From NCBI GenBank assembly GCA_950097015.1, contig CATNEN010000025.1, positions 8,928,001 through 8,992,000 on the forward strand: 64,000 nt of DNA, written 5' to 3'. A program made the translations under genes and the position numbers. Positions 1 through 32,129 of this stretch are shown one piece after another (the first letter of the stretch is position 1; each line of letters starts with the position of its first letter). Below the pieces are notes generated by a model. The model saw only the letters and a list, made by a program, of their open reading frames with translations, was not told where the DNA came from and did no database searches. The DNA is from Macrostomum hystrix (Eukaryota > Animalia > Platyhelminthes).

Positions 1-33
1 TTTTGAATTCTGTTTCAGAACTGAAAGCTTAAC

Positions 34-3000
34 ATGACTACAAAGCTGAGCTCATTAATCGTTATTTCTCTGCTGCTGATCCGTAAGTGAAGTGGCTTGT
101 TCGTTGAGGTTACATAATGATATTGATTATTAATTATATTCGCTGATTACACTTGCCCGTTGGAGCTACATGTGCAACACAGCACAGCCGTAGCTATTGC
201 GCGGCTCATCTGAAGGCAGCATGCAGCTGTTCAGTCCATGGACCGGGGGCCACACCTACCCTCAATTACCAGCTAGTACCCGTTTAACAGCTGGGTGAAC
301 TGAAGCAATGCTGAGTGAGTTGTCCTGCTAGTGGACACGAATTGTTCCAGCGAAGTCGGAATCGAACCCCCGACCTTCAAGTCGATTAGTTTGAGAAAAC
401 CACTAGGCTACAAACCCTGATTTCATATAATTTTATTTAAAATGAGTTCTGCTAAAATCTGTGCTACTAATTATTTATTAAACATTTTCAGCTACTGCCA
501 GGTCTGATGATTGGCACTGCGTGCACGGCGCAACCCACGAAGCGGAAGCCAAAATTGGAGACATAAACGCGATTAGGGTGAGTAGTATGTTGCAAACGGC
601 CTTTATCGACCAGAAGATAAGAAATCCTTAGAATAAAAGATTCCTATGTACTGAGTACGTAAGCGATGCCTTAAGAATAGCCAAGTAAAGCGAGTTTTAT
701 TAGCACCCAGTTGGGTCAGATTTGCAGCCAATGACAATGGACAGCGCTTCCAAAGGCTGTGTGCCTGTACGTGGACTGAGGAGGCCGCGACTCCCCTCAA
801 AAGTTTTTATCCGAGCTAATGCTGGCACTAGTTATATAGATGGCTAAATGTGAAGAAAATGCTTTTTAAACGACTTGCTCAACCTCCAAGACACATTTAG
901 CTTCTATTCGTGCGGTTCTATCCAGTCAGCTGCAAGGAGCCAGGATAAAATAAAGCTGCGTCTGCTGTTTCAGGTGATGACGTATGTCCGAATTGATCCG
1001 GGCTATAGCAAGAACCTGGAGTGCACGTGGACTCTGAAGGCGATCAACTATGACCAGCCCAGACAGATGTACATTGACGTGCCCGTGGTAGACTTTGACA
1101 ACAATATTGACCCGTTTTGCAACAAAACCGACGTGTTCAGCTTCTGGCATAAGTACAACGAGAGTGAGTGGCTTGGCTTAAGACAAAAGTTTCCTCTAAG
1201 TTTCCTCTCAACCCTCGACAATTCAACACTCCTATCAAGGAGAAATCATTTATAGTAATAATTCAACTAAAACTACGAGTCACAGTAATTTCGTCGGCTT
1301 TCGATGCAAATTAAAACTCTAACGTGGAAGTACAAGCAGGCAATGTGTGGCTTTTTATTAAGGAAAATGTGGTGCTTTCGTTTTGGCTTTACGAGTGTAA
1401 TTTCGTTACTCTATAAATATTGCGAACATCTCTGTTTAATTCTTATTGAGTATTCACAACAGCTGCTATCAGCCGACTGCACACATTTCAGCTGATTCGC
1501 GGCAGGAGTCCTGGTGCAGTGAATCGTCCGTGTCACGCAGTTTCCAATTCTTGCCGTTCAGAAGGCAAATAATCAACTTGTGGGACTCGTGAGTAGCACT
1601 GCAGCTTCTTACTGAGCTCTCTTATGAGAATGCGAGTTGAGACCCTGCTGCCTCACTTACCACTTCACTCTGCAGGTCGTACTACCTGACTGCGCAATTC
1701 CGGTCTGACAATGAGCAAGTCCGCTCCGATGCCAAGGGATTGCAGTTGGATGTGCAGGTGCTGGACCCAGATTATTGCCACCTGAAAATGATGGATCTCG
1801 ATAACTACTGCTACCTGGTCACTCCTGAGAATGTGTCGCTAGCTCAATCCAATCAGGTTGGAAAACTCTTCCTCGGCAACATTTTCACTGTCCGAGGCGC
1901 CTCTTCTGGCCGGGATATCTTAGACTTTCTGCGCAGATTCTCTGAGAGAAGTACGCATTTCTTTTTTGAATTTCTGATGAGGATATTTTTGCTCAATTGT
2001 GCTCAATCTTGTCACCTCTTTGCGCTTCCCTCAGACAAAGCCAGGAAAGACGAGTATCCATACGAGTCGCCACTGGCCCTGACTAATCTCAGACTGTGGA
2101 CCGGCTACTTTGTGAACGAATCCTCCTTCAGCGAGGAGGACCCGGTCATGTTTTACTCAGATCCGATAGACGACTGCATTGTCAAGCAAGTGAAAGTGTG
2201 AGTGCTGCTTCTCTATCCCGAGTCTAGTCTAAAGGATATTGTAAATATCATATGGTTTAGAATGTCAATTATTCGATTTCAGGACTCGTGAGATTTTGAC
2301 CGGCTGTAATAAAAACCCAGCGCCTGTAGCCCTTAATTGGCTTAGCAACGGCAGCGTGCATTTTTGCTGTGTGCCAGGCAACGATTCGATGCCAGCTCTG
2401 ATCCAGTTCAGCCAGATTCCTAAAACCAAGGGCGACCTGCACCCGCAGCTGTTCCGCACCTGCGACATCGCGCCGCCAACAACGACAACTACAGCGCCGC
2501 CAACAACGACTACGACTCCGGAACCAACGACAACTACAGCGCCGCCAACAACGACTACGACTCCGGAACCAACGACAACTACAGCGCCGCCAACAGCGAC
2601 CACGACTCCGGAACCAACGACAACTACAGCGCCGCCAACAACGACTACGACTCCGGAACCAACGACAACTACAGCGCCGCCAACAACGACTACGACTCCG
2701 GAACCAACGACAACTACAGCGCCGCCAACAACGACTACGACTCCGGAACCAACGACAACTACAGCGCCGCCAACAACGACTACGACTCCGGAACCAACGA
2801 CAACTACAGCGCCGCCAACAACGACTACGACTCCGGAACCAACGACAACTACAGCGCCGCCAACAACGACTACGACTCCGGAACCAACGACAACTACAGC
2901 GCCGCCAACAACGACTACGACTCCGGAACCAACGACAACTACAGCGCCGCCAACAACGACTACGACTCCGGAACCAACGACAACTACAGCGCCGCCAACA

Positions 3001-3891
3001 ACGACTACGACTCCGGAACCAACGACAACTACAGCGCCGCCAACAACGACTACGACTCCGGAACCAACGACAACTACAGCGCCGCCAACAACGACTACGA
3101 CTCCGGAACCAACGACAACTACAGCGCCGCCAACAACGACTACGACTCCGGAACCAACGACAACTACAGCGCCGCCAACAACGACTACGACTCCGGAACC
3201 AACGACAACTACAGCGCCGCCAACAACGACTACGACTCCGGAACCAACGACAACTACAGCGCCGCCAACAACGACTACGACTCCGGAACCAACGACAACT
3301 ACAGCGCCGCCAACAACGACTACGACTCCGGAACCAACGACAACTACAGCGCCGCCAACAACGACTACGACTCCGGAACCAACGACAACTACAGCGCCGC
3401 CAACAACGACTACGACTCCGGAACCAACGACAACTACAGCGCCGCCAACAACGACTACGACTCCGGAACCAACGACAACTACAGCGCCGCCAACAACGAC
3501 TACGACTCCGGAACCAACGACAACTACAGCGCCGCCAACAACGACTACGACTCCGGAACCAACGACAACTACAGCGCCGCCAACAACGACTACGACTCCG
3601 GAACCAACGACAACTACAGCGCCGCCAACAACGACTACGACTCCGGAACCAACGAAAACTACAGCGCCGCAAACAACGACTACGACTCCGGAACCAACGA
3701 CAACTACAGCGCCGCCAACAACGACTACGACTCCGGAACCAACGACAACTACAGCGCCGCCAACAACGACTACGACTCCGGAACCAACGACAACTACAGC
3801 GCCGCCACCAATCAGAGCAGTGCCGTCAGCGGCAATACTATCATTATTATTGATTTTGTTGTTGCCCTTGTTATCATCGTGGCTATTGTGA
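34..3891 (+). CDS. Spliced gene, copy 1: signal peptide + CUB domain + divergent C-type-lectin-like domain + Thr/Pro mucin stalk + probable GPI-anchor signal
   Basis: Hand-assembled phase-compatible GT-AG exons: 34-82 (MTTKLSSLIVISLLLI), 492-577, 974-1163 (GYSKNLECTWTL, CUB N-half), 1492-1588, 1676-1950 (YLTAQFRSDN..KGLQLDV CUB end; CHLK..NYCYLV lectin-like start), 2035-2197 (LWTGY), 2283-3891 (45-bp repeat, then hydrophobic tail AAILSLLLILLLPLLSSWLL-stop). An extra exon at 704-766 is possible but uncertain. Confidence 0.8.
140..420 (-). mobile_element. tRNA-derived SINE with CORE-like central domain (family 1); duplicated at about 24087-24367
   Basis: Minus strand: A box TAGCCTAGTGG, B box GTTCGATTCC, then GCATTGCTTCAGTTCACCCAGCTGTTAAA and an AT-rich tail; lies in intron 1 of the CUB gene. 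Confidence 0.75.
2470..3807 (+). repeat. Coding 45-bp tandem repeat (PPTTTTTPEPTTTTA)n, mucin stalk, copy 1
   Basis: Unit CCGCCAACAACGACTACGACTCCGGAACCAACGACAACTACAGCG, about 30 near-identical copies, in frame with the terminal exon. Confidence 0.95.
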
Positions 3892-4017
3892 TCGGTGTCG
3901 TTGTCTACTTTAGTCGTCAAAGAGGACAGCAGCCGCCATCAACTAATGGGGACTAGCCGCCACTGCGGGGTAATCAGAAGGAGAAAAAGGCCAGAAGCCG
4001 CTACTGGGGACGAACAC

Positions 4018-4456
4018 TCGGGATTTCAAAAGCGATAGAAACGCTGTGGCTAAGAGTGTCGGCTTGACTGTGGACAATGTCGAAGGCACTTTCTGAAGTC
4101 TGTTTGGTGGGCGCTTTTACTCATAATTTTGCATTGGCTAACAGCGTTGCTTAATTTTGTTTTGTTTATAAAGACAGAAATGTTTTTACGATCGCTTTTT
4201 TCCGGTCTGCGAAGGAAGGAAAACCGGAATTGTCATTTTTCTGTTTTCATTTGAAATCTAAAATAATCTGTAATGCATGCTGAAGAAGCAGAAGTGCCCC
4301 ATTGTCAGTCGACCTTTCGAACCCCCGCGCGTGCGCGTATCTAGCTTGTAATTGCGATCCCCGCGACCCAGTTCCTGTATTCCCATGTTTTACTTCTCTG
4401 TTTAGTAGTAATTGGTGATGGAGCTAATGATATATTGATAAGGTTCCGCAATTAAA
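4018..4456. repeat. Dispersed repeat fragment (also 19884-20406 and about 27995-28433)
   Basis: CGGGATTTC.AAAGCGATAGAAACGCTGTGG...AAGGTTCC.CAATTAA present three times; the 19.9-kb copy has an (AACAATTAATT)n expansion. Confidence 0.8.
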
Positions 4457-4829
4457 TTTATATTTCCCGAACATAGAATCCTTTTCCCCGGATTCCTATG
4501 ATTCGAAATCCCCCATCCCCGGATCATTAATTGGTTAACTTGACTTGCTACATATCGAATTAAAGTAAGGATGCGAGAGGAAGCAGTCTATCTATTTGTG
4601 TGGTTATTATTATCATTAGTTAGAGGTTAGGATATAATTCTCCATCCTCAATACCGTTTTCTGATTGTTAGTTGTTAGATTGTTTCGTAATTGATTGTAG
4701 TAATTTGTCTGCAGCAATATATTTGAAGCAATACCTGTCTTTAATTTCACTATTCTAATTATACGTTCCTTAAATATTTGGGCTTAAGTTATTATTGTAG
4801 TGTCTGTTATTAATGCTTCTGATGACAGC

Positions 4830-5161
4830 TGTTGTATCTTAAATAACTGACGCAACGGAGATTCAGATTTGTTAGACTTAGAGTAATAAGGAAAACACGC
4901 CGATAGGCGGCACTCGGCAGGCAGACGAATAGGAGTGTGTATTTGATATATTATAGCAATAGCCGTACGATATACGCATGAGTGCAGAGGTCGGGGCTTT
5001 TATTTATAGGCCCAAAGGCGTGTGGAGAGAGCATTCTAGAAAGTTACTAAAAATAGACTACACGGGAAAGTTCTGGAACCAGTGATGGACTTAACGCCTT
5101 ACGACAAAGAATAGAAATTTCTGGAAAGTTCCCGGGAATTACAGCAACAATAGTCTCAACA
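4830..5161 (-). mobile_element. Putative solo LTR (duplicated at about 28807-29138)
   Basis: TGTTG...CAACA termini, 332 bp, TATAAATAAAAG on the minus strand; no convincing 5-bp TSD. Confidence 0.4.
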
Positions 5162-5559
5162 GCTGCAGCGACCCTTTTGACCCTTTCGGCCAATCGGCAA
5201 TTTATTGGCCGATTTATAATATTTGTGAAGTTAAAATAGGAGGCCGCATCAAGAAAAAGATGTAGCTAGTTTAACCTGTCCTCAGGTGACGGCAATTCTT
5301 TCGGACTGTTCTAGACCTAGTGCCACGGCCATAGTATTCGCTATACCATTATCTTAGTTCCTTTCGGCTTAGGCTCTATAGGTTCTTTAGGTTCTCAGTG
5401 CAGCTTTTTCGAAACAGTTGCAACTAGTTAGCTGATTTAAAAGTAATTAAGCTAGTCATTTTGATCAAATCAAAATGCAAAAGTACTGAGAACACGTCTA
5501 GTCCTTTATAAAGCTGAGCTGCGGAGCATGCTCCATTTTATCTAAGATTGCAATCTCTG

Positions 5560-5880
5560 CTTGAACAAACACATGGGCAACGTTGCGAACACGTTGTCGG
5601 GCCATTGTCATGTTCCTGTGCCGCATCGCCAAGATCACCAAACTGAGCAGCGTCACTCTCAGGATGCTGTACAGGGCCTACGGTGAGAGTGCTCTCACCT
5701 ACGGCGCCCCAATCTTGACTCTGATCTGCGTCACCAACCAGATCAAGCTGCAAAAGATCTAAACCCTTGCTCTGCGCATCTGCTATGGTGTGCCTTCTTA
5801 CCTGAGCACCGAATACCTTCACAAACTGGCCGACATGCCAATGCTCTCAGCCAGAGAAAGCAGCTCGGTGTGGCCTGCAT
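5560..5880 (+). mobile_element. Degraded non-LTR retrotransposon fragment (post-RT region, I/Jockey-like)
   Basis: LRMLYRAYGESALTYGAPIL..KLQKI*TLALRICYGVPSYLSTEYLHKLADMP matches the typical LY...L.YG.P.W...LQ..QN.ALR...G.P...LH pattern; in-frame stop. Confidence 0.65.
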
Positions 5881-6002
5881 GCATGCCTTTTTATTTCAAT
5901 TTTTATTTCAATATTTCAATTTTTATTAGATCCCTTCTTTGTGCGGGATTTCCCCTGTATATTTCTGCCTATTTTATCTCCCAATGCGTGCCTAAATATA
6001 GC

Positions 6003-6367
6003 CTTGCAAATATTGAATATTTTTTTGTTTCATTAAGGCTCAATATTCGCATAAAATAAGCCAAATCAAATCGAGTGTATATATATTATGAATTTCGATT
6101 AAATCCAATAATAGTCTGCGGCAGAGTTTTTCGAAACTGATCAGCAGCCCCAGTCAAATAGGGAATTCGTTTTAACAACAACCTATTATACCCTTGCCTC
6201 AACCATAACCCTAAACCTAAACCTAACCCTAAACCAAACCGTAACCCTAAACCTAACCTTAATGTTGTGACTGATTGTGTGAGTACACTTGCCCTGTGAG
6301 TAAACCTAGCGTGAGTCACTTTATACACAAAATACAAGATACTAAATTGTGTATTTAGTATCTCCGT
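6003..6367. mobile_element. Non-autonomous dispersed element with telomere-like microsatellite and terminal hairpin (second copy about 19607-19883); possibly Helentron/HINE-like
   Basis: Two homologous copies; degenerate (TAACCC/TAAACC)n at 6200-6260; perfect 11-bp stem AGATACTAAAT-tgtgt-ATTTAGTATCT at 6337-6363. Confidence 0.5.
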
Positions 6368-6639
6368 AATTAACCCGTCCAGTTTAACTAATCTTTAGCG
6401 GTATTCTTTAATTATTTGCGCGAATTCACTGAACAAGTTTCCAAGAAATTCGACTACTGCTTAATTCGACTTCTTTTTCTATTCCGGTATCACGCCGTAT
6501 GCTACTATGGACTATGCTACTGTAAATATTTACTGCTTTGCCTTTATCACTTATTAGACTGACGTAATATTTTATTCCTATGTTACAGTTCTTTTCATTA
6601 TGACGTATTTAAATGATGTGCTCTGTGGCTGCTATCTGC

Positions 6640-6950
6640 AATTAATAATTAATAATTGATTACACCTGCCCCAATTGGGTCAGATGTGCAGCCGACAGCA
6701 CAGCCGCAGCTAATGCGCGGCGCATCTGAAGGCTGCGTACAGCTGTTCAGTCCATGGACTGGGGGGACGCCACACCCACCTTCAATTATCCCAGCTGATG
6801 CTGGTACCCATTTAACAGCTGGGTGAACTGAAGCAATGCAGAGTTAAGTGTCTTGCTAAAGGACACAAATTGTTTCAGGGGAGTCGGGAATCGAACCCCC
6901 GACCTTCAAGTCGTGAGTCCGACGCCCTAACCACTAGGCTACAACCTCTG
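6640..6950 (-). mobile_element. tRNA-derived CORE-like SINE (family 1), better-preserved copy
   Basis: Minus strand GTAGCCTAGTGGTTAGGGCG...GGTTCGATTCCCG...GTGTCCTTTAGCAAGACACTTAACTCTGCATTGCTTCAGTTCACCCAGCTGTTAAATGGGTACC; homologous to 140-420. Confidence 0.8.
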
Positions 6951-7400
6951 TTCAATCTGCAATTAAAATAGGCCTACTTTGTCTATAGTCGGCTAGCTAG
7001 CTAACGATTAAATGCTGAACAGCGAATTATATAACTATTTGACAAGCTCCTATGATTTGGCATTGCAAGCATATATGGAGCTATGCAGTAAATAAAAAAC
7101 AGGCTAGACCTATTTCAGTTCTTATTGATTGAACAAAACTTAAGAGTGATTTAGCAAGTTTAGCTTAATGATTGCATCTGAAATAAAAAGCAGTTAGCTA
7201 GGCCAATAAACCATAATGCCGCAACCACAAGCATATTCACTGGCCACTATAGATGGTATTTTTGTGTCATTGGGCTCTTTCTATATTATTATGTCATACT
7301 CAGTTTTAACTTCATAAATTAAATTAGGCTATCATATTTATTACTTTTGTCCACAGATTTAGTACTGCTTCATAGACTAGCTAGGCCTATATTAATTATT

Positions 7401-7995
7401 GGCAATAGTGCACTTTTGTTAGCAAAATTATATTTTTTTAAATTGAAATTTTAAAACCAGAAAACAATAACAACATAAATTGTGTCTTAAACAATTATAA
7501 CAATTGTGGCAGAGCACAGTCTCTCTTTTTAGCTCCCTGGTTGCCGAACTTGCCAACTCGTCATTGTGTTCTAGTGGCAGATACAGAGCTTGTCACTGGG
7601 CACTGTAGTAGTGGCAAATCCAGAAAAGCATGTTTCCTAAAGCCCTGTTTGCTCTGAACAGTCGGCGCCACATAAACTTGTGGATGTGGCCCTCAAAGAG
7701 GGCATCGCTTGTTCCATGCATGGCCCTGAATTTGGCCTTGCAATGCGGCCTTAATTTGGCCTTACATTCCCTCGATTGTGTTGGTGAGTGTTGCTTAAAC
7801 TTATGAGTTTATGTGGCACAAACAGCGACTAGTGTTACATTCCGTGGCTTGGTGACAAGTTCTGTGACCAGTGAGCTCTGGCACAGTTGCTAGAATCGTT
7901 TAAAACATCAATTTTTATCATTGTTATTGTTTTCTGGTTTTAAACTTTCAAATTTAAACGAAATATAATTTTGCAAACAAAAGTGCACTATTGCC
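7401..7995. mobile_element. MITE with long TIRs and 8-bp TSD (Merlin-like termini)
   Basis: TIR GGCAATAGTGCACTTTTGTT.GCAAAATTATATTT... (>70 bp, imperfect) at both ends; TSD TAATTATT at 7393-7400 and 7996-8003. Confidence 0.85.
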
Positions 7996-8017
7996 TAATT
8001 ATTTCTCTTTGTGCTAT

Positions 8018-9279
8018 CAGTGCTAGGCACTTCCGGTACTTTGTTACTTAGGAATTTACATTTTTCTTAAAGTGTTACTTTTTTAGTTACTTTTTTCAAC
8101 TGCTTTGAACAGTACTGGGTAATGGAGTAGCCACTGGGTCACTATTGGGTAATGGAGTAGCAATAACAGAGGCTTTTCTCTGTAGTCTGGTCCTCGGGTC
8201 CTCTTTTAATAGCCAAAAGCCATTAGAAACTGCTACAACACTGCTCTCCTAGCTAGTGCTGCAGTTGAGTGTGCATTCTCTGTAGCCAAGGATGTCCTAT
8301 GTGGTAAACATGTGTCCTGAGCAATAGCATGCTCACAATGCTCACAAGGAATTCATTTATGCAGAATTCATTTATGCAGAATTCATTTATGCAAAATTCA
8401 TTTATGCAGAATTTATGCAGATATAATTAAAAAATATTTTTTTAAATAAAGTATTTTTACAGCAAATAAAAAAATTGTTAGAAATTTACAATTAATTTTA
8501 CTTTTTACTTCTTAAACACAATTTAACTTCCCTATTTACAATCCCAGCTTCATTACATTCCAGTCTAACTCTTGCCCATTGTCAGTTGCCCATTGTTGTT
8601 CATTGTCATGTCACGACTCATGTCAATTCTCTTCCTCTACATCACTCTTCAACTCTTTTCAGTTGTCCATTTTCTAGTTTTCTCCGTCCTTCTATCCCTT
8701 CTCTCCATCCCTCTCCTTTCTCCTCTCCTTTCTCCATTCATCTCATTCATTCTTCTCACACCAAAAATTGAAAATGGAAAAGTTCCCAAAGGTTGCAAAC
8801 CTGTTTGTTTATGTTTTTGCATGTTTACTGTTTATGCATCAGTGGTCACACTGGCTATCAATCTATCATATCATAATGCATATTCTAATATTCTATTCAT
8901 TCATATTCACATATTGTATTGAAATTGACAATAAAATAGCAACTGACATCCTATGCCGAGAATAATTTTTATAAGCTTATAATATTTCAACTAACCTGTC
9001 CTGTCTAACTGCTAGGCTGCAACTTTCACACCTAGCTTTTAGAAAATATTCGCTATTTGGTCCTGGCAAATTTTAAGTAATTTAAATAAATTGTTTTTAA
9101 ATAATTTAAAATCTGAAAATCCAAAAATCTGAAAAAATGACATTAGTAACAAAGTAACAGACTAAGTAACGGAAGTTACCTAAAAATCCAAAAGTACCAG
9201 TTACAAGTAACTAATGAAAAATCATTTTTGGAGAATTTTTAAACAAAAAGTACCCTAAAAGTAACATTGCCCAGCACTG
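8018..9279. mobile_element. Non-autonomous hAT-like DNA transposon
   Basis: Termini CAGTGCTAGGCA / TGCCCAGCACTG, subterminal GTTACTT/AAGTAAC motifs, near-perfect 8-bp TSD TGTGCTAT / TATGCTAT; only the right end survives in copy 2 (29595-29629). Confidence 0.7.
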
Positions 9280-9459
9280 TATGCTATATTTATGCCAGTT
9301 AGGCTTCTCCCTTTCCACTTTAGGGTAGCATTCATTAACAGTAGGCAATGTTATACATTGTTTTGCTCAATTATTTTTTAACCTGATTCGAACTCATGTG
9401 ACCACATTAGTGTGTAGTATGATGTGGCAAGGGTCACACACATATGCTGATATAGCTTT

Positions 9460-11514
9460 TGCGCCTTTGCGACCGCCCTGGGATCAGCGCAGGCGCCGGA
9501 CTACAGCAGAATCAGCTCAGCCATCGCCACTGCCGCTGCCAAGACTCTGCCGCTTATGGAACCCGCGTCACGGCAACTTCCAGTTTGGGCGAGCGACCCG
9601 GAGGTCCGTGAGGCCCGCCGCACTGTCGAGCAGCTGCGGCGAGCCAGGCGACCGATATCCGATGCCGAGAAGGCCCTGGCAGACGCCTACGCAAGTCGAC
9701 AGAAAGCCGCTGTTGACGACGCGATCCGGGCTGTCACCTCTGTCGGGCCTGAACGGCAGAGCAGGGTCGTCTGGCCGGTCGTGAACGCCCTCACCGGTCG
9801 AAAAAAAAAGAAGGCGGCGCTCAACCCGGCTGGCGACACTGCCGAGGAGCGCAGAAACGAGCTGCATACCTTCTTCGCCGCCGTCGACTCTGCCGAACGA
9901 GATGCCGCTGCCCCCCGAGGTGGCGCTACCGCGGCAGGAGGACTTCGACACCAGTCCAGTGACCAGCACGGACATCGTGGAGTTCGCCCGCAGGGCACCG
10001 CGCCCCCGGTCCGGATGAGGTCCCCGTCGAGGCGCTGCGGGTCACAAGGGTTGCCACCGAGGTGGCCCGCGTGATGAACGGCGTCCTGGCGGGAGGCCCT
10101 GCGCCCCGCGAGTGGACCCAGGCCACCATCGTCGGCATCCCGAAGAAGCCCGGCACTACGCGGAATGAGGAGCATCGCGGGATCTCGCTCATGTCCTGTG
10201 CCGCGAAGCTGTTCAACCGGGTGCTGTTAGCACGGTTACAGCCTGTGCTGGACTCGTTTCTGCGGTACGAGCAGAACGGGTTCCGGCACGGTGACTCAGA
10301 TCCTGGCCCTCCGCCGCATCATCGAGGAGGCGCGCATCCACCAGTCAAGCCTTGTCGTCATCTTTGTTGACTTTCTCAAGGCTTTCGACTCGGTGGCCCG
10401 CGGCGCGCTGCCTCACGTACTCCGTGCCTACAACATACCGCAGCAGCTGATCTCCGCCATCATCGCGCTGTATCAGGACACAACCGCTGTGTTAGCGACG
10501 CCAGACGGACCGTCGGACCAGTTCAGCACTACCTCCGGAGTGCTGCAGGGTGACACTCTGGCGCCCTTTCTCTTCGTGCTGGTGATGGACTGGGTGCTCA
10601 GGACCGGCCTGCCGACTGCAGAGGACGCTTTTCTGCTTCAAAGGCGCACTAGTCGACGGCACCCGAAGAAGAAGCTGTCTGTCCTCAGCTACGCGGACGA
10701 CCTGCCCCGCTGTCTACGACGGCCGAAGGCGCCCAACGGCTGCTGGATGGCCTGACTGCGGCGGCGGCGAGGGTCGGCCTCGCTATCAACGCCATGAACA
10801 CCGAGGTGCTGACGGTGCCGCATAACCTACCTGCCGAGATTCGACTACAAGACGGTGACGGCCCGGGACCGGGCTCCCGAAGTGCCGTCAGTTCGTCTAC
10901 CTCGGCGGACTGGTGCCTGACGTGGGCGACGACCTGGCGAGACGGTGCGGCAAGGCCTGGGCCGCCTTCCGTTCTGTGCGGGCGGTGCTGCTCTCCGAGG
11001 CCCTGTCGAACGGCGCCAGGTCCCAGCTGTTCCAGGCGGTTGTCGAGACCGCCCTGTTGTACAATGCTGAGACCTGGACGATGACCGGGGCGCTCGAGGC
11101 GCAGCTCGACGCGGCGCATGCGGCCCTAGTTCGCGCCGCTTTCGGTGCCCGACGCGGCCCTGGCAGCGAGACATCCGATTCCCTCTACCAGCGTGCGTGC
11201 CTAACTTGGCCTTCTGTCCTGCTGAGTCAGCGGCGCCTGTGTCAGGCCGGGCATGTCTTCCGGGCCGAAGCCTACTGCCCAGAGCCGCTGCAGGATGTCC
11301 TGCTGCGGACATCGCAGGGACCGCGCAGGCGCGGCCTGGGTCAATCAGCCCGCTATGTCGACCGTCTTTTTGAAGACGCCCGAGCACCCAGCCAGGCGGC
11401 CGGCGTGAAGTATGTCAGAGACGCGCGAAACTCTGAAACGCGCGATTTGACGCTCCCCCTCTTGGCCACTTTTGTGTTCGGCTTGGGCGTAACTATTATT
11501 ATTATTATTATTAT
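9460..11514 (+). mobile_element. 5'-truncated, frameshifted RTE/RTEX-like LINE, copy 1
   Basis: RT motifs HRGISLMSCAAKLFNRVL, FVDFLKAFDSV, GVLQGDTLAPFLF, SYADDL spread over several frames; (TAT)n tail at about 11492-11514; 9-bp TSD TATAGCTTT at 9451-9459 and 11515-11523; GC-rich. Confidence 0.9.
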
Positions 11515-11791
11515 TATAGCTTTGCAAGGTTTTAAGCACAGATTCTATATTATCTAGATGCGCCACTGCAGCAATTTCTAATGCATTCAGTTGCCGCTTT
11601 CAATGCCTCTGCGAAAAACCCAGGGTTTATACCACAGACATTTTACGCTGCTGCAGTCAAGCGGCAGCCATGATCACAGATTCTATATTATATTATATTA
11701 GCCATGATCGTCTCTCACTTGCAAGCAGAGCTGCAGATTTTAAGGTTGGCACAGCGCAATCCTCCACAACTGAGTACGAACACCAACCAGT

Positions 11792-12140
11792 GATGAGCGG
11801 GCATCGCTGCTGCGCTGCTGCTTGTGATTCGAGGGAGAACACGCCAGTTTCACAACACGGCTTCGCTGTGCACCTGCATCAGTTTCCGAGCGATGATGAG
11901 GTGGCAGCGCAATGGATTCGAGTGCTAGAGCTCCAGAATATGGATGTGCAGACTGCGCGAAGCCGTAGGCTGAAGGTTTGCAGCCTGCACTTTAAGGACT
12001 CGGACTACCCCATCGCACCACGTGACAGGCGCTCGGCTCGGTTGAGGAAAGACGCCGTTCCATGGCCTGCAACTTTCCCTCCGCGATTCAGTCAGTCGTC
12101 ATTCCCTCAGTCATTCAGCCAGAATTGGTCTATGACCTAA
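11792..12140 (+). CDS. THAP zinc-finger domain ORF (host-gene exon or transposon relic), copy 1
   Basis: MSGHRCCAAAC...LHQFPSD...QWI...KVCSLHFKDSDY...LRKDAVP: C2CH ligands, conserved P, W, F and the AVP box. Confidence 0.75.
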
Positions 12141-12921
12141 ACCGAATTGTTGAGTTCACACCTCAGCAGAGTTCAAACTACAGAGGGTGTCCGCAAAGCA
12201 CAGAACTTACAGAACTTATTGGTAAGTTATGTGCTTGTAGGTATCGAATTTTTACTAATTAGCGCACGTACATACGATTTAAGACATCATGAGAAAAAAA
12301 TTAAACGTTGGGCTGGTTTTCAGTAGATAATGCATCGTTGATTTAGCTCGTAAAGCAATAATATTTAACGTCAAGAAGCAGACAGACATAATAAAACAAA
12401 CGCGCAGGATAAGTATTGGAAAAATTCTCTGAATGGGTATAGCAAATAATATAATTCAGTTGGTAAAAGTAACAGTGTGCTGCAATGAAGGTGTTGCAGT
12501 CAGTTCAGTTCAGGAGCTGTTTGTCCGTATCTGCATTGCAATCAATTAATAATTTCCGGGTTTGTTAGAAAAGAGTCAGATCCTAATCCTAACGAGGTAA
12601 TGACACTCGCTCACAAAAGAACTATTAATTTAAATAATGTGATATAAAAATTCTATGTTTTAAAAGCACAAGCGATTAAAATAGTATATTTCAAGACATT
12701 CTTGCAGTTTAGGGAGTAAATAAGTTAAAATGAAGCATTATAGTTAAACGATTCGAACATTACATCAACCTTACATATGAACACTTGTAGCACATTGGAA
12801 ACACTTTAGGCGATAGTACATTCATAGTAAGCTTCTTATAGTACGAGTAGTTTCATCAGGGATCGAGAGAAATCACAAAACTCAGTCTTGCAATTCGATT
12901 GCCTGTAATAGAAGGTAATGA

Positions 12922-13393
12922 GGCAATGTTCTACTTCCGTTCGTTATATTATTTTTTTGTTTGCAAACGACAGATAACGACAAAAAAACAAGTTTAACGG
13001 TAACAAAAAGTCGTAGTTTGGTCAGACAGTTCTGAAAAGTCTTGGTCAGTCTTTCTTCTTTCAAACCGGGTAAGTGCCTAATCCAGTAGAGGAGGCGACC
13101 GAAGCTATTCTTGGGGTATAGACAGCGCCATAAGAATTCTTCGAAGTGGCTTTCGAATAGAGCAGCACTCGTGCCATGCATTTGACGCAGCTTGGCCTTC
13201 GCAAAATCTTCAGCTGCAGAATTCTGTGCCTTAGCTTCCTGTTTCCCCATATTTGCCAGATTTTGCCATAGACATAGATCCAAGTGTCAAGTCACGGCAA
13301 AGCCACGTCAGCACAACTTTTCAAACTCAGAATGCACGTGTGGCACGAATTCAGACGAAAAAATAATATAACGAACGGAAGTAGAATATTGCC
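12922..13393 (-). mobile_element. Internally deleted Merlin (IS1016/IS1595-related) DNA transposon with transposase C-terminal remnant
   Basis: TIR GGCAAT(G/A)TTCTACTTCCGTTCGTTATATTATT (>32 bp, 1 mismatch); TSD GGTAATGA at 12914-12921 and 13394-13401; minus-strand AKAKLRQMHGTSAALFESHFEEFLWR..KNSFGRLL matches the Merlin C-terminus; empty site at 33252-33259. Confidence 0.9.
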
Positions 13394-14084
13394 GGTAATG
13401 AACATAGTATAGAATGAAAACTGTCTCGCAATCCTTGGAAAATGTTTAAATTTTACATTTTCCTAGAATTATAAATCCGATTCTCAGCGATCTGCAGTTA
13501 AAAATTTTCGAATTACTGATAGGCATCGTTAATAAATAGTAACTTCGCTATAATTGAAGTGCGTCAAAGTTATTCGTTAAATATTTCCGATTGACGTAAG
13601 TTTAATTATAGGTAATTGTTACCAATTCTTTCTACTTAGTGTTAATCGCTAAATAAAATGCGCAAGTCATTCTTTAAATTCTAAAATATTCTAAAAATGT
13701 ATGACAATACCCTCCGTTACTAACGCTTAATAAATGACATACAAAACTTTAATTCTAAAATTAATTGAAAATTAATCAAATTAAATATTTTTTTATTATG
13801 AAAATTATAATTTACTAAAGATTAGACTAAAATATTTACAATTAATGGGCTTTTAATATAAACTTAAGTTTTGTTTATTATTAAACGATTTTACCCGCCA
13901 ATGTCCTGAAAATGAAGCGAGGTATGTTGCCCTGCTCCTCGAGTTGGGCTCCAGCTAAGTAAGAAAACTATACTCATACTCATGAGAAGATAAAAACATG
14001 AATTAGCTTCCCAAACGGAAATCCTAAATGAATGTCAGTGCCAGTCCTCGACAAGGTGGCAGGTGTTCAATGTGTTCTTCATCT

Positions 14085-15149
14085 TCATGGACTCGCCGGT
14101 GGCATCTGGCGACGCCGGAGTCGCTCCGTCGCCGCTTCGTCGTCGCCGCCGTTGCAGCAGGCCAGGATGCGACGCCGCAGACGTTCGCGCCGAGTTCGGC
14201 CAGTCAGCACGAAGGGCCGCAGCGAATCGTCTGGCGCCGGGGGTGGCACCACGTTGAACTCGAGTTCAGCTGCCGCCAGGTAGTCGTGCATGTTGTCGCT
14301 CTCGCTGCCTGGTGACTTCTTCAGCCACTCCATGGACGGCTCGCTCAGGCCCTCCGGGTAGCGGGGCGCCGACTGGCCCTCCACGCAGCGAGATGAGATC
14401 TGGAACAGAGGCGGAGGATGAAGCATTTCATTAAGTTCTGGCATCGCGTTAGCAGTAGAAAGACCATTGGGTTGTTTCAGTTTGCCCACATTTTTCTTTT
14501 TTCTGCATCCGCCAAAATATTCAACCAATCACCATGAAGTCCAGAGCTAAAAGTTTCCACTCTATTCGATGAAACAACTTCCATAATCACAAAGGGGCGA
14601 ATTCCCTGTGGTCTTCCCCAGGGGCGAATTCCCTGTGGTCTTCCCCAGGGGCGAATTCCCTGTGGTCTTCCCCAGGGGCGAATTCCCTGTGGTCTTCCCC
14701 AGGGGCGAATTCCCTGTGGTCTTCCCCAGGGGCGAATTCCCTTTGGTCTTCCCCAGGGGCGAATTCCCTGTGGTCTTCCCCAGGGGCGAATTCCCTATGG
14801 TCTTCCCCAGGGGCGAATTTCCTGTGGTCTTCCCCAGGGGCGAATTCCCTGTGGTCTACTGTTAATGTCGAGTCTCTGAATGCCTAGGAATCGATTGGTT
14901 TCTAAAAATAGTTGCATTTCTTAAAGCCGTGCAGTTGCAAAGACGCATTCTATTCAGTAATATTTTAATTTGTACGATTACATTCTTTACATTTCAAGCA
15001 ACAATTCTTCTAATTTCAAAGTGTAGCAGTGCTCAGCTCACCTCCAGGTTGTAGTCCAGAATCTCGGACGTGTGAAAATCTTCGTCATCGTCTCCGAAGG
15101 GATTCATAACGCACATAGCCACCTTGAGCCAGCCCATCAGAAAGAGGAA
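14085..15149 (-). pseudogene. BEST: Orphan last two exons of bestrophin A (partial duplicate)
   Basis: Exons 15042-15149 ([36 protein letters not shown]) and 14085-14399; homology to the full gene stops 23 nt into the preceding intron. Confidence 0.85.
14595..14855. repeat. 27-bp intronic minisatellite (shorter array at 34448-34605)
   Basis: Unit AGGGGCGAATTCCCTGTGGTCTTCCCC; about 10 versus about 6 units. Confidence 0.95.
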
Positions 15150-15172
15150 CTGGCCAATTTAGAAAAAAAGTT

Positions 15173-23600: not shown

Positions 23601-23980
23601 GGCAATCAGGACGATTTATGAATAGTTCTTCTTGTTCTTCGCTGAAATGGGGGCGAACCTTGCTTAAGGGGACATTGGTTCTATTCTTAAGAGGGGCATT
23701 GTTGGTTCTCTGCAATTGGGGGCATTGGTTTTCTGCTAAAGATGAATTATTTCTTACTAGTATCACTTACATTTACTAATTAGAGATTTGGTAAAGGTGG
23801 ATGGATGGATAGGTGGGTTTTTTTATTACTACTACTACTGTTGCGTAGTAGTATCGAAGTAATATCGAACTAGGCTTACTAGGAGAGCAATACAAGATGT
23901 ACTTTTATGAGGCACAAACTTTTGCATCCTAACATCATAAATCTAATTTTTGAATTCTGTTTCAGAACTGAAAGCTTAAC

Positions 23981-26900
23981 ATGACTACAAAGCTGAGCTC
24001 ATTAATCGTTATTTCTCTGCTGCTGATCGGTAAGTGAAGTGGCTTTTTAGTTGAGGTTACATAATGATATTGATTATTAATTATATTCGCTGATTACACT
24101 TGCCCGTTGGAGCTACATGTGCAACACAGCACAGCCGTAGCTATTGCGCGGCTCATCTGAAGGTAGCATGCAGCTGTTCAGTCCATGGACCGGGGGCCAC
24201 ACCTACCCTCAATTACCAGCTAGTACCCGTTTAACAGCTGGGTGAACTGAAGCAATGCTGAGTGAGTTGTCCTGCTAATGGACACGAATTGTTCCAGCGA
24301 AGGCGGAATCGAACCCCCGACCGTCAAGTCGATTAGTTTAAGAAAACCACTAGGCTACAAACCCTGATTTCATATAATTTTATTTAAAATCTGTACTATT
24401 TATTATTTATTAAACATTGTCAGATACTGGCAGGTCTTCCGATTGGCACTGCCTACACAACGCACGCTACGAAGACGGTGTCAAAATTGGAAATAAGTAC
24501 GCGGTTAGGGTGAGTAGTATGTTGCAAACGGCCTTTATCGACCAGAAGATAAGAAATCCTTAGATTAAAGGATTTTTATGTACTGAGTACGTAAGCGATG
24601 CCTTAAGAATAGCCAAGTAGGCGAGTTTTATTAGCACCCAGTTGTGTCAGATTTGCAGCCAATGACAATAGACAGCGCTTCCAAAGGCTGTGTGCCTGTA
24701 CGTGGACTGAAGAGGCCGCGACTCCCCACAAAAATTTTTACCTAAGCTAATATGCTGGCACTAGTTACATAGATGGCTGAATGTGAAGAAAATGCTATTT
24801 AAACGACTTGCTCAACCTCCAAGACACATTTAGCTTCTATTCGTGCGGTTCTATCCAGTCAGCTGCAAGGAGCCAGGATAAAATAAAGCTGCGTCTGCTG
24901 TTTCAGGTGATGACGTATGTCCGAGGTGATCCGGGCTATAGGAAGAACCTGGAGTGCGGGTATCTTCTGAACGCGATCAACTATGACCAGCCCAGACAGA
25001 TGTACATTGACGTGCCCGTGGTGGACTTTGACAACAATACTGACCCGTTTTGCAACAAAACCGACGTGTTCAGCTTCTGGCATAAGTACAACGAGAGTGA
25101 GTGGTTTGGCTTAAGATAAAAGTTTCCTCTAAGTTTTCTCTCAATCCTCGACAATTCAACACTCCTATCAAGGAGAAATCATTTATAGTAATTCAAAACT
25201 AAAACTCCGAGGTACTGAGTAATTTCGTCGGCTTTCGCCTAAAATTAAAATTTTAACGTAAAAGTACAAGCAGGCAATGTGTGACTTTTTATTAAGGAAA
25301 ATGTGGTGCTTTCGTTTTGGCTTTACGAGTGTAATTTTATTACTCTATAAATATTGCGAACATCTCTTTAATTATTATTGAGTATTCACAACAGCTGCTA
25401 TCAGCCGACTGCACACATTTCAGCTGATTCGCGGCAGGAGTCCTGGTGCAGTAAATCGTCCGTGTCACGCAGTTTCCGATTATTGCCGTTCAGGCAGCAA
25501 ATAATCAACTTGTGGGACTCGTGAGTAGCACTGCAGCTTCTTACTGAGCTCTCTTATGAGAATGCGAGTTGAGACCCTGCTGCCTCACTTACCACTTCAC
25601 TCTGCAGGTCGTACTACCTGACTGCGCAATTCCGGTCTGACAATGAGCAAGTCCGCTCAGATGCCAAGGGATTGCAGTTGGATGCGTGGGTGGTGCACCC
25701 AAAATTTTGCCACTTGAAAATGTTGGATCTCGATAACTACTGCTACCTGGTCACTCCTGAGAATGTGTCGCTAGCTCAATCCAATCAGGTTGGAAAACTC
25801 TTCCTCGGCAACTTTTTCACTGTCCGAGGCGCCTCTTCTGGCCGGGATATCTTAGACTTTCTGCGCAGATTCTCTGAGAGAAGTACGCATTTCTTTTTCG
25901 AATTTCTAATGAGGACATTTTTGCTCAATTGTGCTCAATCTTGTCACCTCTTTGCGCTTCCCTCAGACAAAGCCAGGGAAGACGAGTATCCTTTCGAGTC
26001 GCCACTGGCCCTGACTAATCTCAGACTGTGGACCGGCTACTTTGTGAACGAATCCTCCTTCAGCGAGGAGGACCCGGTCATGTTTTACTCAGATCCGATA
26101 GACGACTGCATTGTCAAGCAAGTGAAAGTGTGAGTGCTGCTTCTCTATCCCGAGTCTAGTCTAAAGGATATTGTAAATATCATATGGTTTAGAATGTCAA
26201 TTATTCGATTTCAGGACTCGTGAGATTTTGACCGGCTGTAATAAAAACCCAGCGCCTGTAGCCCTTAATTGGCTTAGCAACGGCAGCGTGCATTTTTGCT
26301 GTGTGCCAGGCAACGATTCGATGCCAGCTCTGATCCAGTTCAGCCAGATTCCTAAAACCAAGGGCGACCTGCACCCGCAGCTGTTCCGCACCTGCGACAT
26401 CGCGCCGCCAACAACGACAACTACAGCGCCGCCAACAACGACTACGACTCCGGAACCAACGACAACTACAGCGCCGCCAACAACGACTACGACTCCGGAA
26501 CCAACGACAACTACAGCGCCGCCAACAGCGACCACGACTCCGGAACCAACGACAACTACAGCGCCGCCAACAACGACTACGACTCCGGAACCAACGACAA
26601 CTACAGCGCCGCCAACAACGACTACGACTCCGGAACCAACGACAACTACAGCGCCGCCAACAACGACTACGACTCCGGAACCAACGACAACTACAGCGCC
26701 GCCAACAACGACTACGACTCCGGAACCAACGACAACTACAGCGCCGCCAACAACGACTACGACTCCGGAACCAACGACAACTACAGCGCCGCCAACAACG
26801 ACTACGACTCCGGAACCAACGACAACTACAGCGCCGCCAACAACGACTACGACTCCGGAACCAACGACAACTACAGCGCCGCCAACAACGACTACGACTC

Positions 26901-27868
26901 CGGAACCAACGACAACTACAGCGCCGCCAACAACGACTACGACTCCGGAACCAACGACAACTACAGCGCCGCCAACAACGACTACGACTCCGGAACCAAC
27001 GACAACTACAGCGCCGCCAACAACGACTACGACTCCGGAACCAACGACAACTACAGCGCCGCCAACAACGACTACGACTCCGGAACCAACGACAACTACA
27101 GCGCCGCCAACAACGACTACGACTCCGGAACCAACGAAAACTACAGCGCCGCAAACAACGACTACGACTCCGGAACCAACGACAACTACAGCGCCGCCAA
27201 CAACGACTACGACTCCGGAACCAACGACAACTACAGCGCCGCCAACAACGACTACGACTCCGGAACCAACGACAACTACAGCGCCGCCAACAACGACTAC
27301 GACTCCGGAACCAACGACAACTACAGCGCCGCCAACAACGACTACGACTCCGGAACCAACGACAACTACAGCGCCGCCAACAACGACTACGACTCCGGAA
27401 CCAACGACAACTACAGCGCCGCCAACAACGACTACGACTCCGGAACCAACGAAAACTACAGCGCCGCAAACAACGACTACGACTCCGGAACCAACGACAA
27501 CTACAGCGCCGCCAACAACGACTACGACTCCGGAACCAACGACAACTAATGCGCCGCCAACAACGACTACGACTCCGGAACCAACGACAACTACAGCGCC
27601 GCCAACAACGACTACGACTCCGGAACCAACGAAAACTACAGCGCCGCAAACAACGACTACGACTCCGGAACCAACGACAACTACAGCGCCGCCAACAACG
27701 ACTACGACTCCGGAACCAACGACAACTACAGCGCCGCCAACAACGACTACGACTCCGGAACCAACGACAACTACAGCGCCGCCACCAATCAGAGCAGTGC
27801 CGTCAGCGGCAATACTATCATTATTATTGATTTTGTTGTTGCCCTTGTTATCATCGTGGCTATTGTGA
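23981..27868 (+). CDS. Spliced gene, copy 2 of the CUB/lectin-like/mucin/GPI surface protein
   Basis: Same exon structure with splice sites conserved: exon 1 23981-24029, exon 2 24424-24509, CUB exon in ORF 24808-25119, lectin-like exons in ORF 25672-26133, terminal exon in ORF 26228-27868. Exons examined stay open despite many substitutions. Confidence 0.8.
26402..27784 (+). repeat. Coding 45-bp mucin repeat, copy 2 (one unit longer)
   Basis: Same unit; ORF 546 aa versus 531 aa. Confidence 0.95.
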
Positions 27869-31852: not shown

Positions 31853-32129
31853 TATAGCTTTGCAAGGTTTTAAGCACAGATTCTATATTATCTAGATGCG
31901 CCACTGCAGCAATTTCTAATGCATTCAGTTGCCGCTTTCAATGCCTCTGCGAAAAACCCAGGGTTTATACCACAGACATTTTACGCTGCTGCAGTCAAGC
32001 GGCAGCCATGATCACAGATTCTATATTATATTATATTAGCCATGATCGTCTCTCACTTGCAAGCAGAGCTGCAGCTTTTAAGGTTGGCACAGCGCAATCC
32101 TCCACAACTGATTACGAACACCAACCAGT

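What the first reader, a model, noticed from the sequence alone, without database searches (positions are those of the whole stretch)
34..2200. Hypervariable ectodomain exons in a duplicated GPI-anchored CUB/lectin-like/mucin gene: candidate recognition-receptor family under diversifying selection
Seen: exon 2 reads TARSDDWHCVHGATHEAEAKIGDINAIR (492-577) versus TGRSSDWHCLHNARYEDGVKIGNKYAVR (24424-24509). By hand count 13 of 28 residues and 23 of 86 nt differ, and every conserved residue uses the identical codon. The next ~120 nt of intron differ at only about 6 positions. Further replacement clusters: RIDPGYSKNLECTWTLKA vs RGDPGYRKNLECGYLLNA, DVQVLDPDYCHLKMM vs DAWVVHPKFCHLKML, and E/K, Q/R, F/L, R/Q in exon 5. 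Cysteines, frames and splice sites are kept. Knowledge: excess replacements in exposed loops typify gamete-recognition, allorecognition and immune receptors. Inference: this is a fast-evolving cell-surface recognition system.
Basis: partly seen in the sequence, partly recalled or inferred. Interest (0 to 1): 0.85.

Follow-up and report, generated by a model that had tools for sequence, protein, structure and literature searches.

The report
Hypervariable exon in flatworm surface-receptor pair
Two neighbouring, expressed flatworm (Macrostomum) genes for a mucin-stalked surface protein are almost identical except for short, amino-acid-changing patches in the outermost binding domain. This fits a fast-diversifying recognition family, but selection is not proven and patch-wise gene conversion explains much of it.

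Summary
Genes A (34-3891) and B (23981-27868) are intact 7-exon paralogs of 822 and 837 aa. Exon 2 differs at 23 of 86 nt and 13 of 28 residues, with no synonymous-only codon, against 27 of 805 nt in the flanking introns (p=3e-12). Spliced, SL-trans-spliced RNA contigs confirm five of the six introns, including the exon 1-exon 2 junction.

The pair is a three-level mosaic:
- 0.1-0.8% divergence 3' of about 2063
- 3.8% in the 5' introns
- 17-31% in five short patches; four overlap exons, one lies wholly in intron 3

Selection is not shown. dN/dS is 1.3 (p=0.5). Exon versus intron density is marginal (p=0.06; shift test 0.11).

The only homologues found are Macrostomum lignano proteins without Pfam hits. 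[quoted passage not shown]

An M. lignano array gives an independent replicate. Two copies are identical over 2400 nt except for five replacement nucleotides in exon 2, copied from a third copy. That is a short gene-conversion tract.

My reading is a tandem surface-receptor family that evolves by conversion mosaics, with a variable N-terminal CUB cassette probably kept by selection. The ligand is unknown.

The scan had already noted CUB+lectin arrays elsewhere in this genome (s1-381990, s1-408096).

The parts
34..82 (+). Gene A, coding exon 1 (signal peptide, phase 1). The mRNA starts at 18, after a trans-splice acceptor AG at 16-17.
   Evidence: Translation. The exon 1-exon 2 joint and the spliced-leader loose ends before place 18 are. 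The leader sequence is matched to PMC5173321.
492..577 (+). Gene A exon 2: hypervariable N-terminal segment of the mature protein, with the first Cys of the CUB fold.
   Evidence: 23/86 nt and 13/28 residues differ from 24424-24509. p=3.5e-12 against flanking introns.
438..572 (+). Hyperdivergent patch 1: a 15-nt indel and 4 substitutions at the intron 1 end, plus exon 2.
   Evidence: 42 differing columns in 135 nt.
974..1163 (+). Gene A exon 3 (CUB core), containing patch 992-1039 (I52G, S57R, T63G, W64Y, T65L, K67N).
1260..1327 (+). Hyperdivergent patch lying wholly in intron 3 (about 13-17 substitutions plus indels in 68 nt).
   Evidence: A 3-nt deletion at 1256 is also seen in read contigs.
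1492..1588 (+). Gene A exon 4 (E119K, Q127R, F128L, R133Q).
   Evidence: Joints 1163->1492 and 1588->1676 in RNA contigs.
1676..1950 (+). Gene A exon 5 (end of the CUB fold and start of the lectin fold), containing patch 1753-1791 (V167A, Q168W, L170V, D171H, D173K, Y174F, M180L).
   Evidence: Most of these sites are invariant in the M. lignano family.
2035..2197 (+). Gene A exon 6 (lectin-fold domain).
   Evidence: Joints 1950->2035 and 2197->2283.
2283..3891 (+). Gene A exon 7: end of the lectin fold, 29.6 x 45-nt Thr/Pro mucin repeats (2480-3811), a hydrophobic C-terminal GPI-type signal, and a stop at 3889-3891.
23981..27868 (+). Gene B (837 aa). Exons 23981-24029, 24424-24509, 24907-25096, 25424-25520, 25608-25882, 25967-26129 and 26215-27868.
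   Evidence: same exon lengths, all AG/GT, ORF intact.
1..15172 (.). Duplicated unit, copy 1. It matches 23948-34919. A has extra DNA at 5601-9244 and about 12922-13393.
   Evidence: Divergence is 0.11% (3812-5600), 0.44% (9245-12921) and 0.84% (13394-14592).
23948..34919 (.). Duplicated unit, copy 2.
167..415 (.). Very high-copy SINE-like repeat inside intron 1 (also present in copy B).
   Evidence: Word depth of about 3e5 in run X1 against about 1e3 elsewhere.

Best explanation
A and B are two expressed neighbours in a tandem array of a Macrostomum-restricted gene family. Each encodes a surface glycoprotein. It has a signal peptide, a CUB-fold domain and a C-type-lectin-fold domain. These sit on a heavily O-glycosylated Thr/Pro stalk of about 440 residues that ends in a GPI-type signal. 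The anchor and the glycosylation are inferred.

The pair is a recombination mosaic. The 3' half of the gene and its flanks are kept nearly identical, by recent duplication and/or homogenising conversion. The CUB-coding 5' 2 kb keeps roughly tenfold older divergence. Within it, short patches of 39-135 nt are 17-31% different (differing alignment columns, indels included). The main one is exon 2, the first about 25 residues of the mature protein.

Most likely these patches arise by short-tract gene conversion from other array members, that is, cassette exchange. In exon 2 they are probably retained because variety at an exposed part of the membrane-distal binding domain is favoured.

Shown: the gene models, expression, the mosaic, the fold assignments, and the conversion mechanism in M. 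lignano. Inferred: conversion in this particular pair, selection, and a ligand-recognition function.
For: Gene models and intact ORFs.
Splicing and the SL leader in RNA contigs from 3 runs and 3 studies.
Mosaic: 28 substitutions in 6646 nt 3' of the gene, against 53/1389 in the 5' introns and 23/86 in exon 2.
A patch of the same density lies in intron 3, so patchiness is not purely a coding effect.
M. lignano array L001: copies at 144 and 10519 are identical over 2400 nt except for 5 replacement nt in exon 2. Those 5 nt equal the copy at 20290, and the flanking informative sites at 130 and 246 are of the recipient type.
M. lignano copies c7 and c8: the exon 3-exon 5 block is about 4% diverged, against 19% on the 5' side and 35% on the 3' side.
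For retention by selection: the 22 in-frame exon 2 differences fall in only 13 codons (P=0.007). There is no synonymous-only codon (P=0.056). There are 0 differences at 9 synonymous sites of the conserved codons. CUB pN is 0.113 against 0.038 in introns (p=1e-7, taking sites as independent). All 11 further coding variants seen in reads that are neither A nor B change the residue.
Folds: CUB, TM 0.61-0.67. All of the top 50 Foldseek hits are C-type lectin domains.
Against: Only two sequences of this species were available. No donor copy for any A/B patch was seen, so conversion in this pair is inferred by analogy.
Omega is not significantly above 1.
If exon 2 had been imported from an old paralog, synonymous changes in the conserved codons would be expected. 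They are abundant in M. lignano exon 2 (pS 0.34-0.88), but none is seen here.
The M. lignano conversion recipient carries a stop codon in exon 3, so that event says nothing about selection.
A/B-variable sites outside exon 2 are mostly invariant in M. lignano, and B usually carries the odd state. That also fits relaxed constraint on B.
The fold evidence rests on low or moderate confidence models.
Confidence: 0.55

Rival explanations
1. Point mutations fixed by diversifying (positive) selection on exposed loops of a recognition receptor since the duplication, with no need for gene conversion.
For: Exon 2 is replacement-only and its conserved codons are identical. Multi-hit codons occur against a 4% background. 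pN in the CUB domain exceeds intron divergence. Third states at codon 17 (P/D/T) and codon 52 (I/G/V), and only replacement variants, are seen in other reads. In M. lignano copy 3 against copy 5, exons 2-3 show Nd 20 and Sd 1.
Against: Omega 1.3 is not significant, and exon 2 pN is about equal to pS by Nei-Gojobori. A dense intronic patch (1260-1327) and a tenfold step in intron divergence at about 2063 cannot come from selection on codons. Demonstrated exon-2 conversion and mosaic paralogs in M. lignano show that another process is at work in the family.
Confidence: 0.2
2. Neutral birth-and-death. One copy, probably B, is redundant and drifting under relaxed constraint. The clusters are complex mutations or neutral conversion tracts with no adaptive meaning.
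For: Omega is about 1. At positions invariant in M. lignano, B carries the deviant state: W64Y, V167A, Q168W, L170V, D173K, Y174F. The M. lignano array holds pseudogenes and fragments, and one pair has omega 0.93. An intronic patch exists.
Against: Both ORFs and all 12 splice sites are intact. B-state letters and a B-type exon 1-exon 2 junction occur in RNA contigs. Drift at the intron rate (3.8%) predicts about 3 changes in exon 2, not 23. Half of the exon 2 codons are perfectly conserved, even at silent sites.
Confidence: 0.17
3. Assembly artefact or alleles. A and B are two haplotypes of one polymorphic gene that were placed in tandem, so the variation is allelic (balanced polymorphism) and not paralogous.
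For: The 3' half is 99.9% identical. Both A-type and B-type contigs occur in one DNA run.
Against: There are no Ns. The units are separated by 8.8 kb of unique sequence and have different right-hand flanks. A carries 3.6 kb of extra DNA. Dense tandem arrays of this family are real in M. lignano.
Confidence: 0.08

Closest known systems
Nematode CLEC proteins that combine CUB and C-type lectin domains
   Same: The same two folds occur in one secreted or surface protein. They form large, lineage-specific, tandemly expanded families. They were the nearest clusters in the language-model search (score 0.82-0.83, a lead only).
   Different: The nematode proteins match Pfam CUB and Lectin_C. This family matches neither. 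There is no mucin stalk or GPI signal in the nematode clusters listed. No sequence homology was detected.
Biomphalaria FREPs, and MHC genes generally (my own knowledge): tandem recognition-gene families diversified by point mutation plus short gene-conversion tracts
   Same: A tandem family, short hyperdivergent patches in the ligand-facing domain, conversion between members (shown here for M. lignano), and homogenised remaining parts.
   Different: The folds differ: IgSF and fibrinogen domains, or the MHC fold, against CUB and CTLD. Somatic diversification or peptide presentation has not been shown here. Selection is not demonstrated here.
Group XIV C-type lectin-like receptors (CD93, thrombomodulin, endosialin; my own knowledge)
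   Same: A lectin-fold head held away from the membrane on a Ser/Thr/Pro-rich mucin-like stalk.
   Different: Those receptors have EGF repeats, a transmembrane helix and a cytoplasmic tail, and no CUB domain. They are single-copy conserved genes, not hypervariable arrays.
Spermadhesins (single-CUB seminal plasma proteins of ungulates; my own knowledge)
   Same: The CUB fold serves as a fast-evolving binding module in a clustered gene family.
   Different: They are secreted single-domain proteins that match Pfam CUB, with no lectin domain, stalk or anchor. A reproductive role for the flatworm family is untested.

Membership tests
CUB domain (Pfam PF00431) | Significant match to the family profile | tested here: not met
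   No CUB hit at E<=10 on the window exons or at E<=1 on six full-length M. lignano homologues. UniProt's automatic name 'CUB domain-containing protein' is a lead only. Sister entries carry plainly unrelated automatic names.
CUB domain (fold level) | Beta-sandwich of about 110-150 residues that superposes on known CUB domains, with four Cys in a C1-C2, C3-C4 spacing | tested here: met
   The ESM Atlas model of P0017, residues 24-175, gives TM 0.61-0.67 over 112-124 residues against clusters dominated by CUB-domain proteins (SCUBE, neuropilin, tolloid, attractin). All feature hits that carry a family are CUB. Cys26, 62, 94 and 117 are conserved in A, B and M. lignano. Caveat: the Atlas model has mean pLDDT 0.55, and my own AF2 models of this part failed.
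C-type lectin-like domain (Pfam PF00059) | Significant match to the family profile | tested here: not met
   No Lectin_C hit. In the family-profile search against PDB sequences, the best hit is a snake C-type lectin at the expected motif, but E=0.63.
C-type lectin-like domain (fold level) | Two-helix and beta-sheet CTLD fold | tested here: met
   Foldseek with the AF2 model of P0017: all top 50 PDB hits are CTLDs (Mincle, DCIR, DC-SIGN, dectin, snaclecs). E is down to 4.5e-4, with TM by target mostly 0.45-0.60 for the single-domain CTLD chains. The modelled part has pLDDT of about 63-79.
Ca2+-dependent carbohydrate-binding C-type lectins | EPN or QPD triplet plus a WND motif in the long-loop region | tested here: not met
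   Read directly from the translations: neither motif is present in A, B or the M. lignano members.
GPI-anchored protein | C-terminal signal: small omega-site residues, a short spacer and a terminal hydrophobic stretch, with no cytoplasmic tail | tested here: inconclusive
   The protein ends ...PPPIRAVPSAAILSLLLILLLPLLSSWLL*. This fits by eye, but no predictor or assay was available. M. lignano relatives instead have a transmembrane helix plus a tail.
Mucin-like stalk | Long tandem Pro/Thr/Ser-rich repeats | tested here: met
   29.6 (A) and 30.6 (B) copies of a 45-nt unit that encodes a 15-residue Thr/Pro repeat, 98-99% matching. Glycosylation itself was not tested.
Genes under diversifying selection | dN/dS significantly above 1 at a class of codons, or dN above neutral divergence | tested here: inconclusive
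   Omega is 1.3, p=0.51. CUB pN is 0.113 against 0.038 in introns, p=1e-7 only if sites are treated as independent. The circular-shift test gives p=0.11. Two sequences cannot support site models.
Gene-conversion mosaics in tandem families | A run of informative sites in one copy matches a different paralog and is flanked by sites of the original type | tested here: met
   Met in M. lignano L001 (5 consecutive sites 182-221 of donor type, 190 other sites of recipient type). Not testable for A/B, because no third copy is in the window.

The most novel reading that the evidence does not exclude
The mucin-stalked CUB+lectin array is a true polymorphic recognition locus of Macrostomum. Exon-2 cassettes, shuffled by short gene conversion among array members, would create individual-specific or copy-specific binding heads. 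These could serve microbe recognition, or partner or sperm discrimination in these hermaphrodites with strong sexual conflict. It would be a non-immunoglobulin, CUB-based analogue of FREP- or MHC-type diversification.
Probability: 0.25. Interest if true: 0.75.

Novelty: new variant of a known kind. Interest (0 to 1): 0.5.

Why it matters
Macrostomum is a model for sexual conflict, regeneration and flatworm immunity, yet no variable surface-recognition system is described for it. No paper in the searchable library mentions this family.

The family is lineage-restricted and arranged in tandem arrays. Its membrane-distal CUB head carries a cassette that is demonstrably exchanged between copies. 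That makes it a concrete, testable candidate for such a system.

It is also a clean small-scale example of how conversion mosaics can mimic, or cooperate with, diversifying selection. For annotation, it shows that current M. lignano gene models in these arrays are chimeras.

Tried and rejected
- Pfam on single exons and on full-length homologues gave no CUB, Lectin_C or other credible family.
- Word-indexed protein searches with the exon 7 head and with exons 5+6 found nothing. The collection seems to hold no proteins of this species.
- The spliced proteins of A and B have no reference, and I did not type them. Folding and fold searches therefore used the M. lignano homologue P0017, with window exons as alignment rows.
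- AF2 on the whole homologue was poor for the CUB half (pLDDT below 35). AF2 on the CUB part alone failed (mean pLDDT 32.6). Variable sites could not be mapped on a trustworthy structure.
- I tested whether A/B-variable positions coincide with positions variable among M. lignano members. They do not (Fisher p=1.0). The overlap is limited to exon 2.
- An ancient exon-2 lineage under purifying selection holds for M. lignano (summed pN/pS 0.23, pS 0.34-0.88). It does not fit A/B, which have no silent differences in the conserved codons.
- Rfam and ARAGORN found nothing in the window.
- Scan notes searched by sequence came back blank.
- A paper search for the M. lignano gene ids found nothing.

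Full report
**What is there**

The window starts inside a segmental duplication. Positions 1-15172 match 23948-34919. Each unit begins with a 7-exon gene.

- Gene A has exons 34-82, 492-577, 974-1163, 1492-1588, 1676-1950, 2035-2197 and 2283-3891, and encodes 822 aa.
- Gene B has exons of identical length at 23981-24029, 24424-24509, 24907-25096, 25424-25520, 25608-25882, 25967-26129 and 26215-27868, and encodes 837 aa.
- All introns are GT..AG in both copies.

The product reads as follows:
- a signal peptide
- a cysteine-containing ectodomain of about 330 residues
- about 30 copies of a 15-residue Thr/Pro repeat, encoded by a 45-nt unit that is 98-99% matching
- a terminal hydrophobic tail with no cytoplasmic residues

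**Expression**

Logan contigs of four public runs were laid on 1-2470. Three of them (X4, X5, X9), from three studies, hold spliced forms with joints exactly at 1163/1492, 1588/1676, 1950/2035 and 2197/2283.

X4 and X5 also carry the exon 1-exon 2 joint. The exon 2-exon 3 joint was not among the joints shown. The refuter 'exon 2 absent from transcripts' fails.

Loose ends before place 18 in X5 and X9 read ...CTGCGAAGACTCAATTTATTGCAT. This is the 3' end of the Macrostomum lignano spliced leader printed in PMC5173321. The mRNA is therefore trans-spliced at the AG at 16-17, and the organism is a Macrostomum flatworm.

**Check of the observation**

- Exon 2 differs at 23 of 86 nt.
- 13 of 28 residues differ, plus the split codon 17.
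- No codon differs only silently.
- There are six differences in the next 120 nt of intron.

The quoted clusters in exons 3 and 5 are exact. The E/K, Q/R, F/L and R/Q group is in the fourth coding exon.

**How unusual is it?**

The pair is a three-level mosaic.
- From about 2063 to the end of the unit, the copies differ by 0.11-0.84%: 28 substitutions in 6646 aligned nt.
- The six introns of the 5' part differ by 53/1389, or 3.8%. The exons differ by 57/1048, or 5.4%.
- Five patches of 39-135 nt show differing columns at 14-31% of positions: 438-572 (the end of intron 1 plus exon 2), 780-835 (intron 2, weak), 992-1039 (exon 3), 1260-1327 (intron 3) and 1753-1791 (exon 5).

Exon 2 against its flanking introns gives p=3.5e-12. 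Exons against introns overall give only p=0.06, and a circular-shift test gives 0.11.

Nei-Gojobori results:
- Overall: Nd 47, Sd 10, pN 0.057, pS 0.044, omega about 1.3 (p=0.51).
- CUB part: pN 0.113 and pS 0.082, against 0.038 in introns.
- Exon 2: pN 0.27 and pS 0.25. All 'silent' steps sit inside multi-hit codons.

A simulation shows that the 22 in-frame differences hit fewer codons than chance (13 against 16.9, P=0.007). The absence of a silent-only codon is borderline (P=0.056). About 9 synonymous sites in the conserved exon 2 codons carry no change.

Drift at the intron rate predicts about 3 changes in exon 2, so relaxed constraint alone cannot explain 23. A classical excess of dN over dS is not shown, and one dense patch is purely intronic.

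**More variants**

Read contigs carry states that are neither A nor B. Codon 17 is P, D or T, and codon 52 is I, G or V. There are also 11 further coding differences, and all of them change the residue. Contigs about 85% identical over exon 5 reveal more distant paralogs.

Earlier scan notes, which are unchecked, report that this mucin-stalk array continues upstream of the window (s1-408096). They also report that other CUB+lectin arrays lie elsewhere in the genome (s1-381990, s1-408163, s1-408209).

**Relatives and folds**

An exhaustive HMMER search with exons 5+6 found eight proteins. The seven looked up are from Macrostomum lignano, and the clear family members are 47-54% identical. A second search added more members. 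None has a Pfam hit for CUB or Lectin_C, nor do the window exons. They align with A and B over the whole ectodomain.

Residues 24-175 of P0017 correspond to window exons 2-5. The ESM Atlas model of this part superposes on clusters dominated by CUB-domain proteins at TM 0.61-0.67.

My AF2 model of P0017 is poor in that half. It is usable for residues 250-335. With it, all top 50 Foldseek PDB hits are C-type lectin-like domains. A weak profile hit to a snake C-type lectin falls on the expected motif.

The EPN/QPD and WND sugar-binding motifs are absent.

M. lignano members end in a transmembrane helix and tail instead of a mucin stalk plus GPI-type signal.

**Independent replicate in M. lignano**

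Locus L001 (NIVC01001192.1) holds six full and two broken family copies in 50 kb. The NCBI model P0016 is a chimera across them.

The copies at 144 and 10519 are identical over 2400 nt except for five nucleotides, and all five lie in exon 2. They change four residues. At exactly those five sites the first copy equals the copy at 20290. At the other 190 informative sites it equals its twin. This is a gene-conversion tract of 40-115 nt confined to exon 2. The recipient type carries a stop in exon 3, so the event shows mechanism and not selection.

Copies c7 and c8 are about 4% diverged from exon 3 to exon 5, introns included. They are 19% diverged on the 5' side and 35% on the 3' side. Among intact copies, exon 2 has pS 0.34-0.88 and summed pN/pS of about 0.23. 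Those are old exon-2 types beside a homogenised core.

Copy 3 against copy 5 gives omega 0.93 overall, but Nd 20 and Sd 1 in exons 2-3. Conversion mosaics are thus pervasive in the family, and exon 2 behaves as an exchangeable cassette.

**Interpretation**

The best reading (0.55) is a tandem surface-receptor family that evolves by duplication and conversion. A variable N-terminal CUB cassette sits at the tip of a mucin stalk. In the window pair, the replacement-only, multi-hit pattern in exon 2 suggests that selection retains the variety. The patches themselves are most simply short conversion tracts.

Rivals:
- pure point-mutation positive selection (0.20)
- neutral decay of a redundant copy (0.17); B carries deviant states at sites invariant in M. 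lignano
- alleles misplaced in tandem (0.08)

Function is inferred from the architecture only. No localisation or ligand data exist, and the literature searches found no description of the family.

**Limits**

- Only two sequences of this species were accessible.
- The spliced window proteins could not be submitted by reference, so the structural work used a homologue about 50% identical.
- Variable sites could not be mapped on a reliable model.
- The site-independence assumed by the Fisher tests is violated by the patchiness.

Noticed in passing
window 16-18: RNA contigs of two runs carry the Macrostomum spliced-leader 3' end (...GAAGACTCAATTTATTGCATG) directly before place 18. The gene is therefore SL trans-spliced at the AG at 16-17. 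The leader's own ATG would read ATG AAC TGA and stop at once.
   Followed up: yes
window 167-415 (and 24114-24362): A stretch of intron 1 has about 300-fold higher word depth than its surroundings in a DNA run, with many contigs that diverge at its edges. It is a very high-copy SINE-like repeat with a tRNA-like T-arm motif, but ARAGORN and Rfam call nothing.
   Followed up: partly
L001 (M. lignano NIVC01001192.1:144209-193840): The annotated 29.6-kb gene for P0016 is a chimera that stitches exons from several tandem family copies. The copies at 144 and 10519 carry an in-frame stop in exon 3. The fragments at 7449 and 18056 are broken.
   Followed up: yes
window 9556-12140 and 29916-32478: The duplicated unit carries GC-rich ORF pieces with reverse-transcriptase (RVT_1, 10291-10752) and THAP (11670-12137) domains. 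These are transposon remains that were duplicated together with the gene.
   Followed up: partly
window 17765-18256: An ORF piece with an AAA_12 helicase domain lies in the unique spacer between the two units. It may be a Helitron- or Pif1-like remnant.
   Followed up: no
window 5601-9244: 3.6 kb is present only in unit A. It contains a degenerate telomere-like CCCTAA/ACCTAA run at 6190-6261 and a 45-nt inverted-repeat pair at 7401-7995.
   Followed up: no
window 35000-64000: This stretch is almost continuous minisatellite arrays: 33-nt x 65, 23-nt x 90, 30-nt x 52, 21-nt x 52, 24-nt x 46 and many others. The gene array sits next to a strongly repeat-rich region.
   Followed up: no
window 2366 (codon 315): All four runs read C instead of G here, which gives Ser instead of the second Cys of the 'FCCV' motif. 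M. lignano members have a single Cys at this place, so the extra Cys of A and B may be specific to these copies or to this individual.
   Followed up: no
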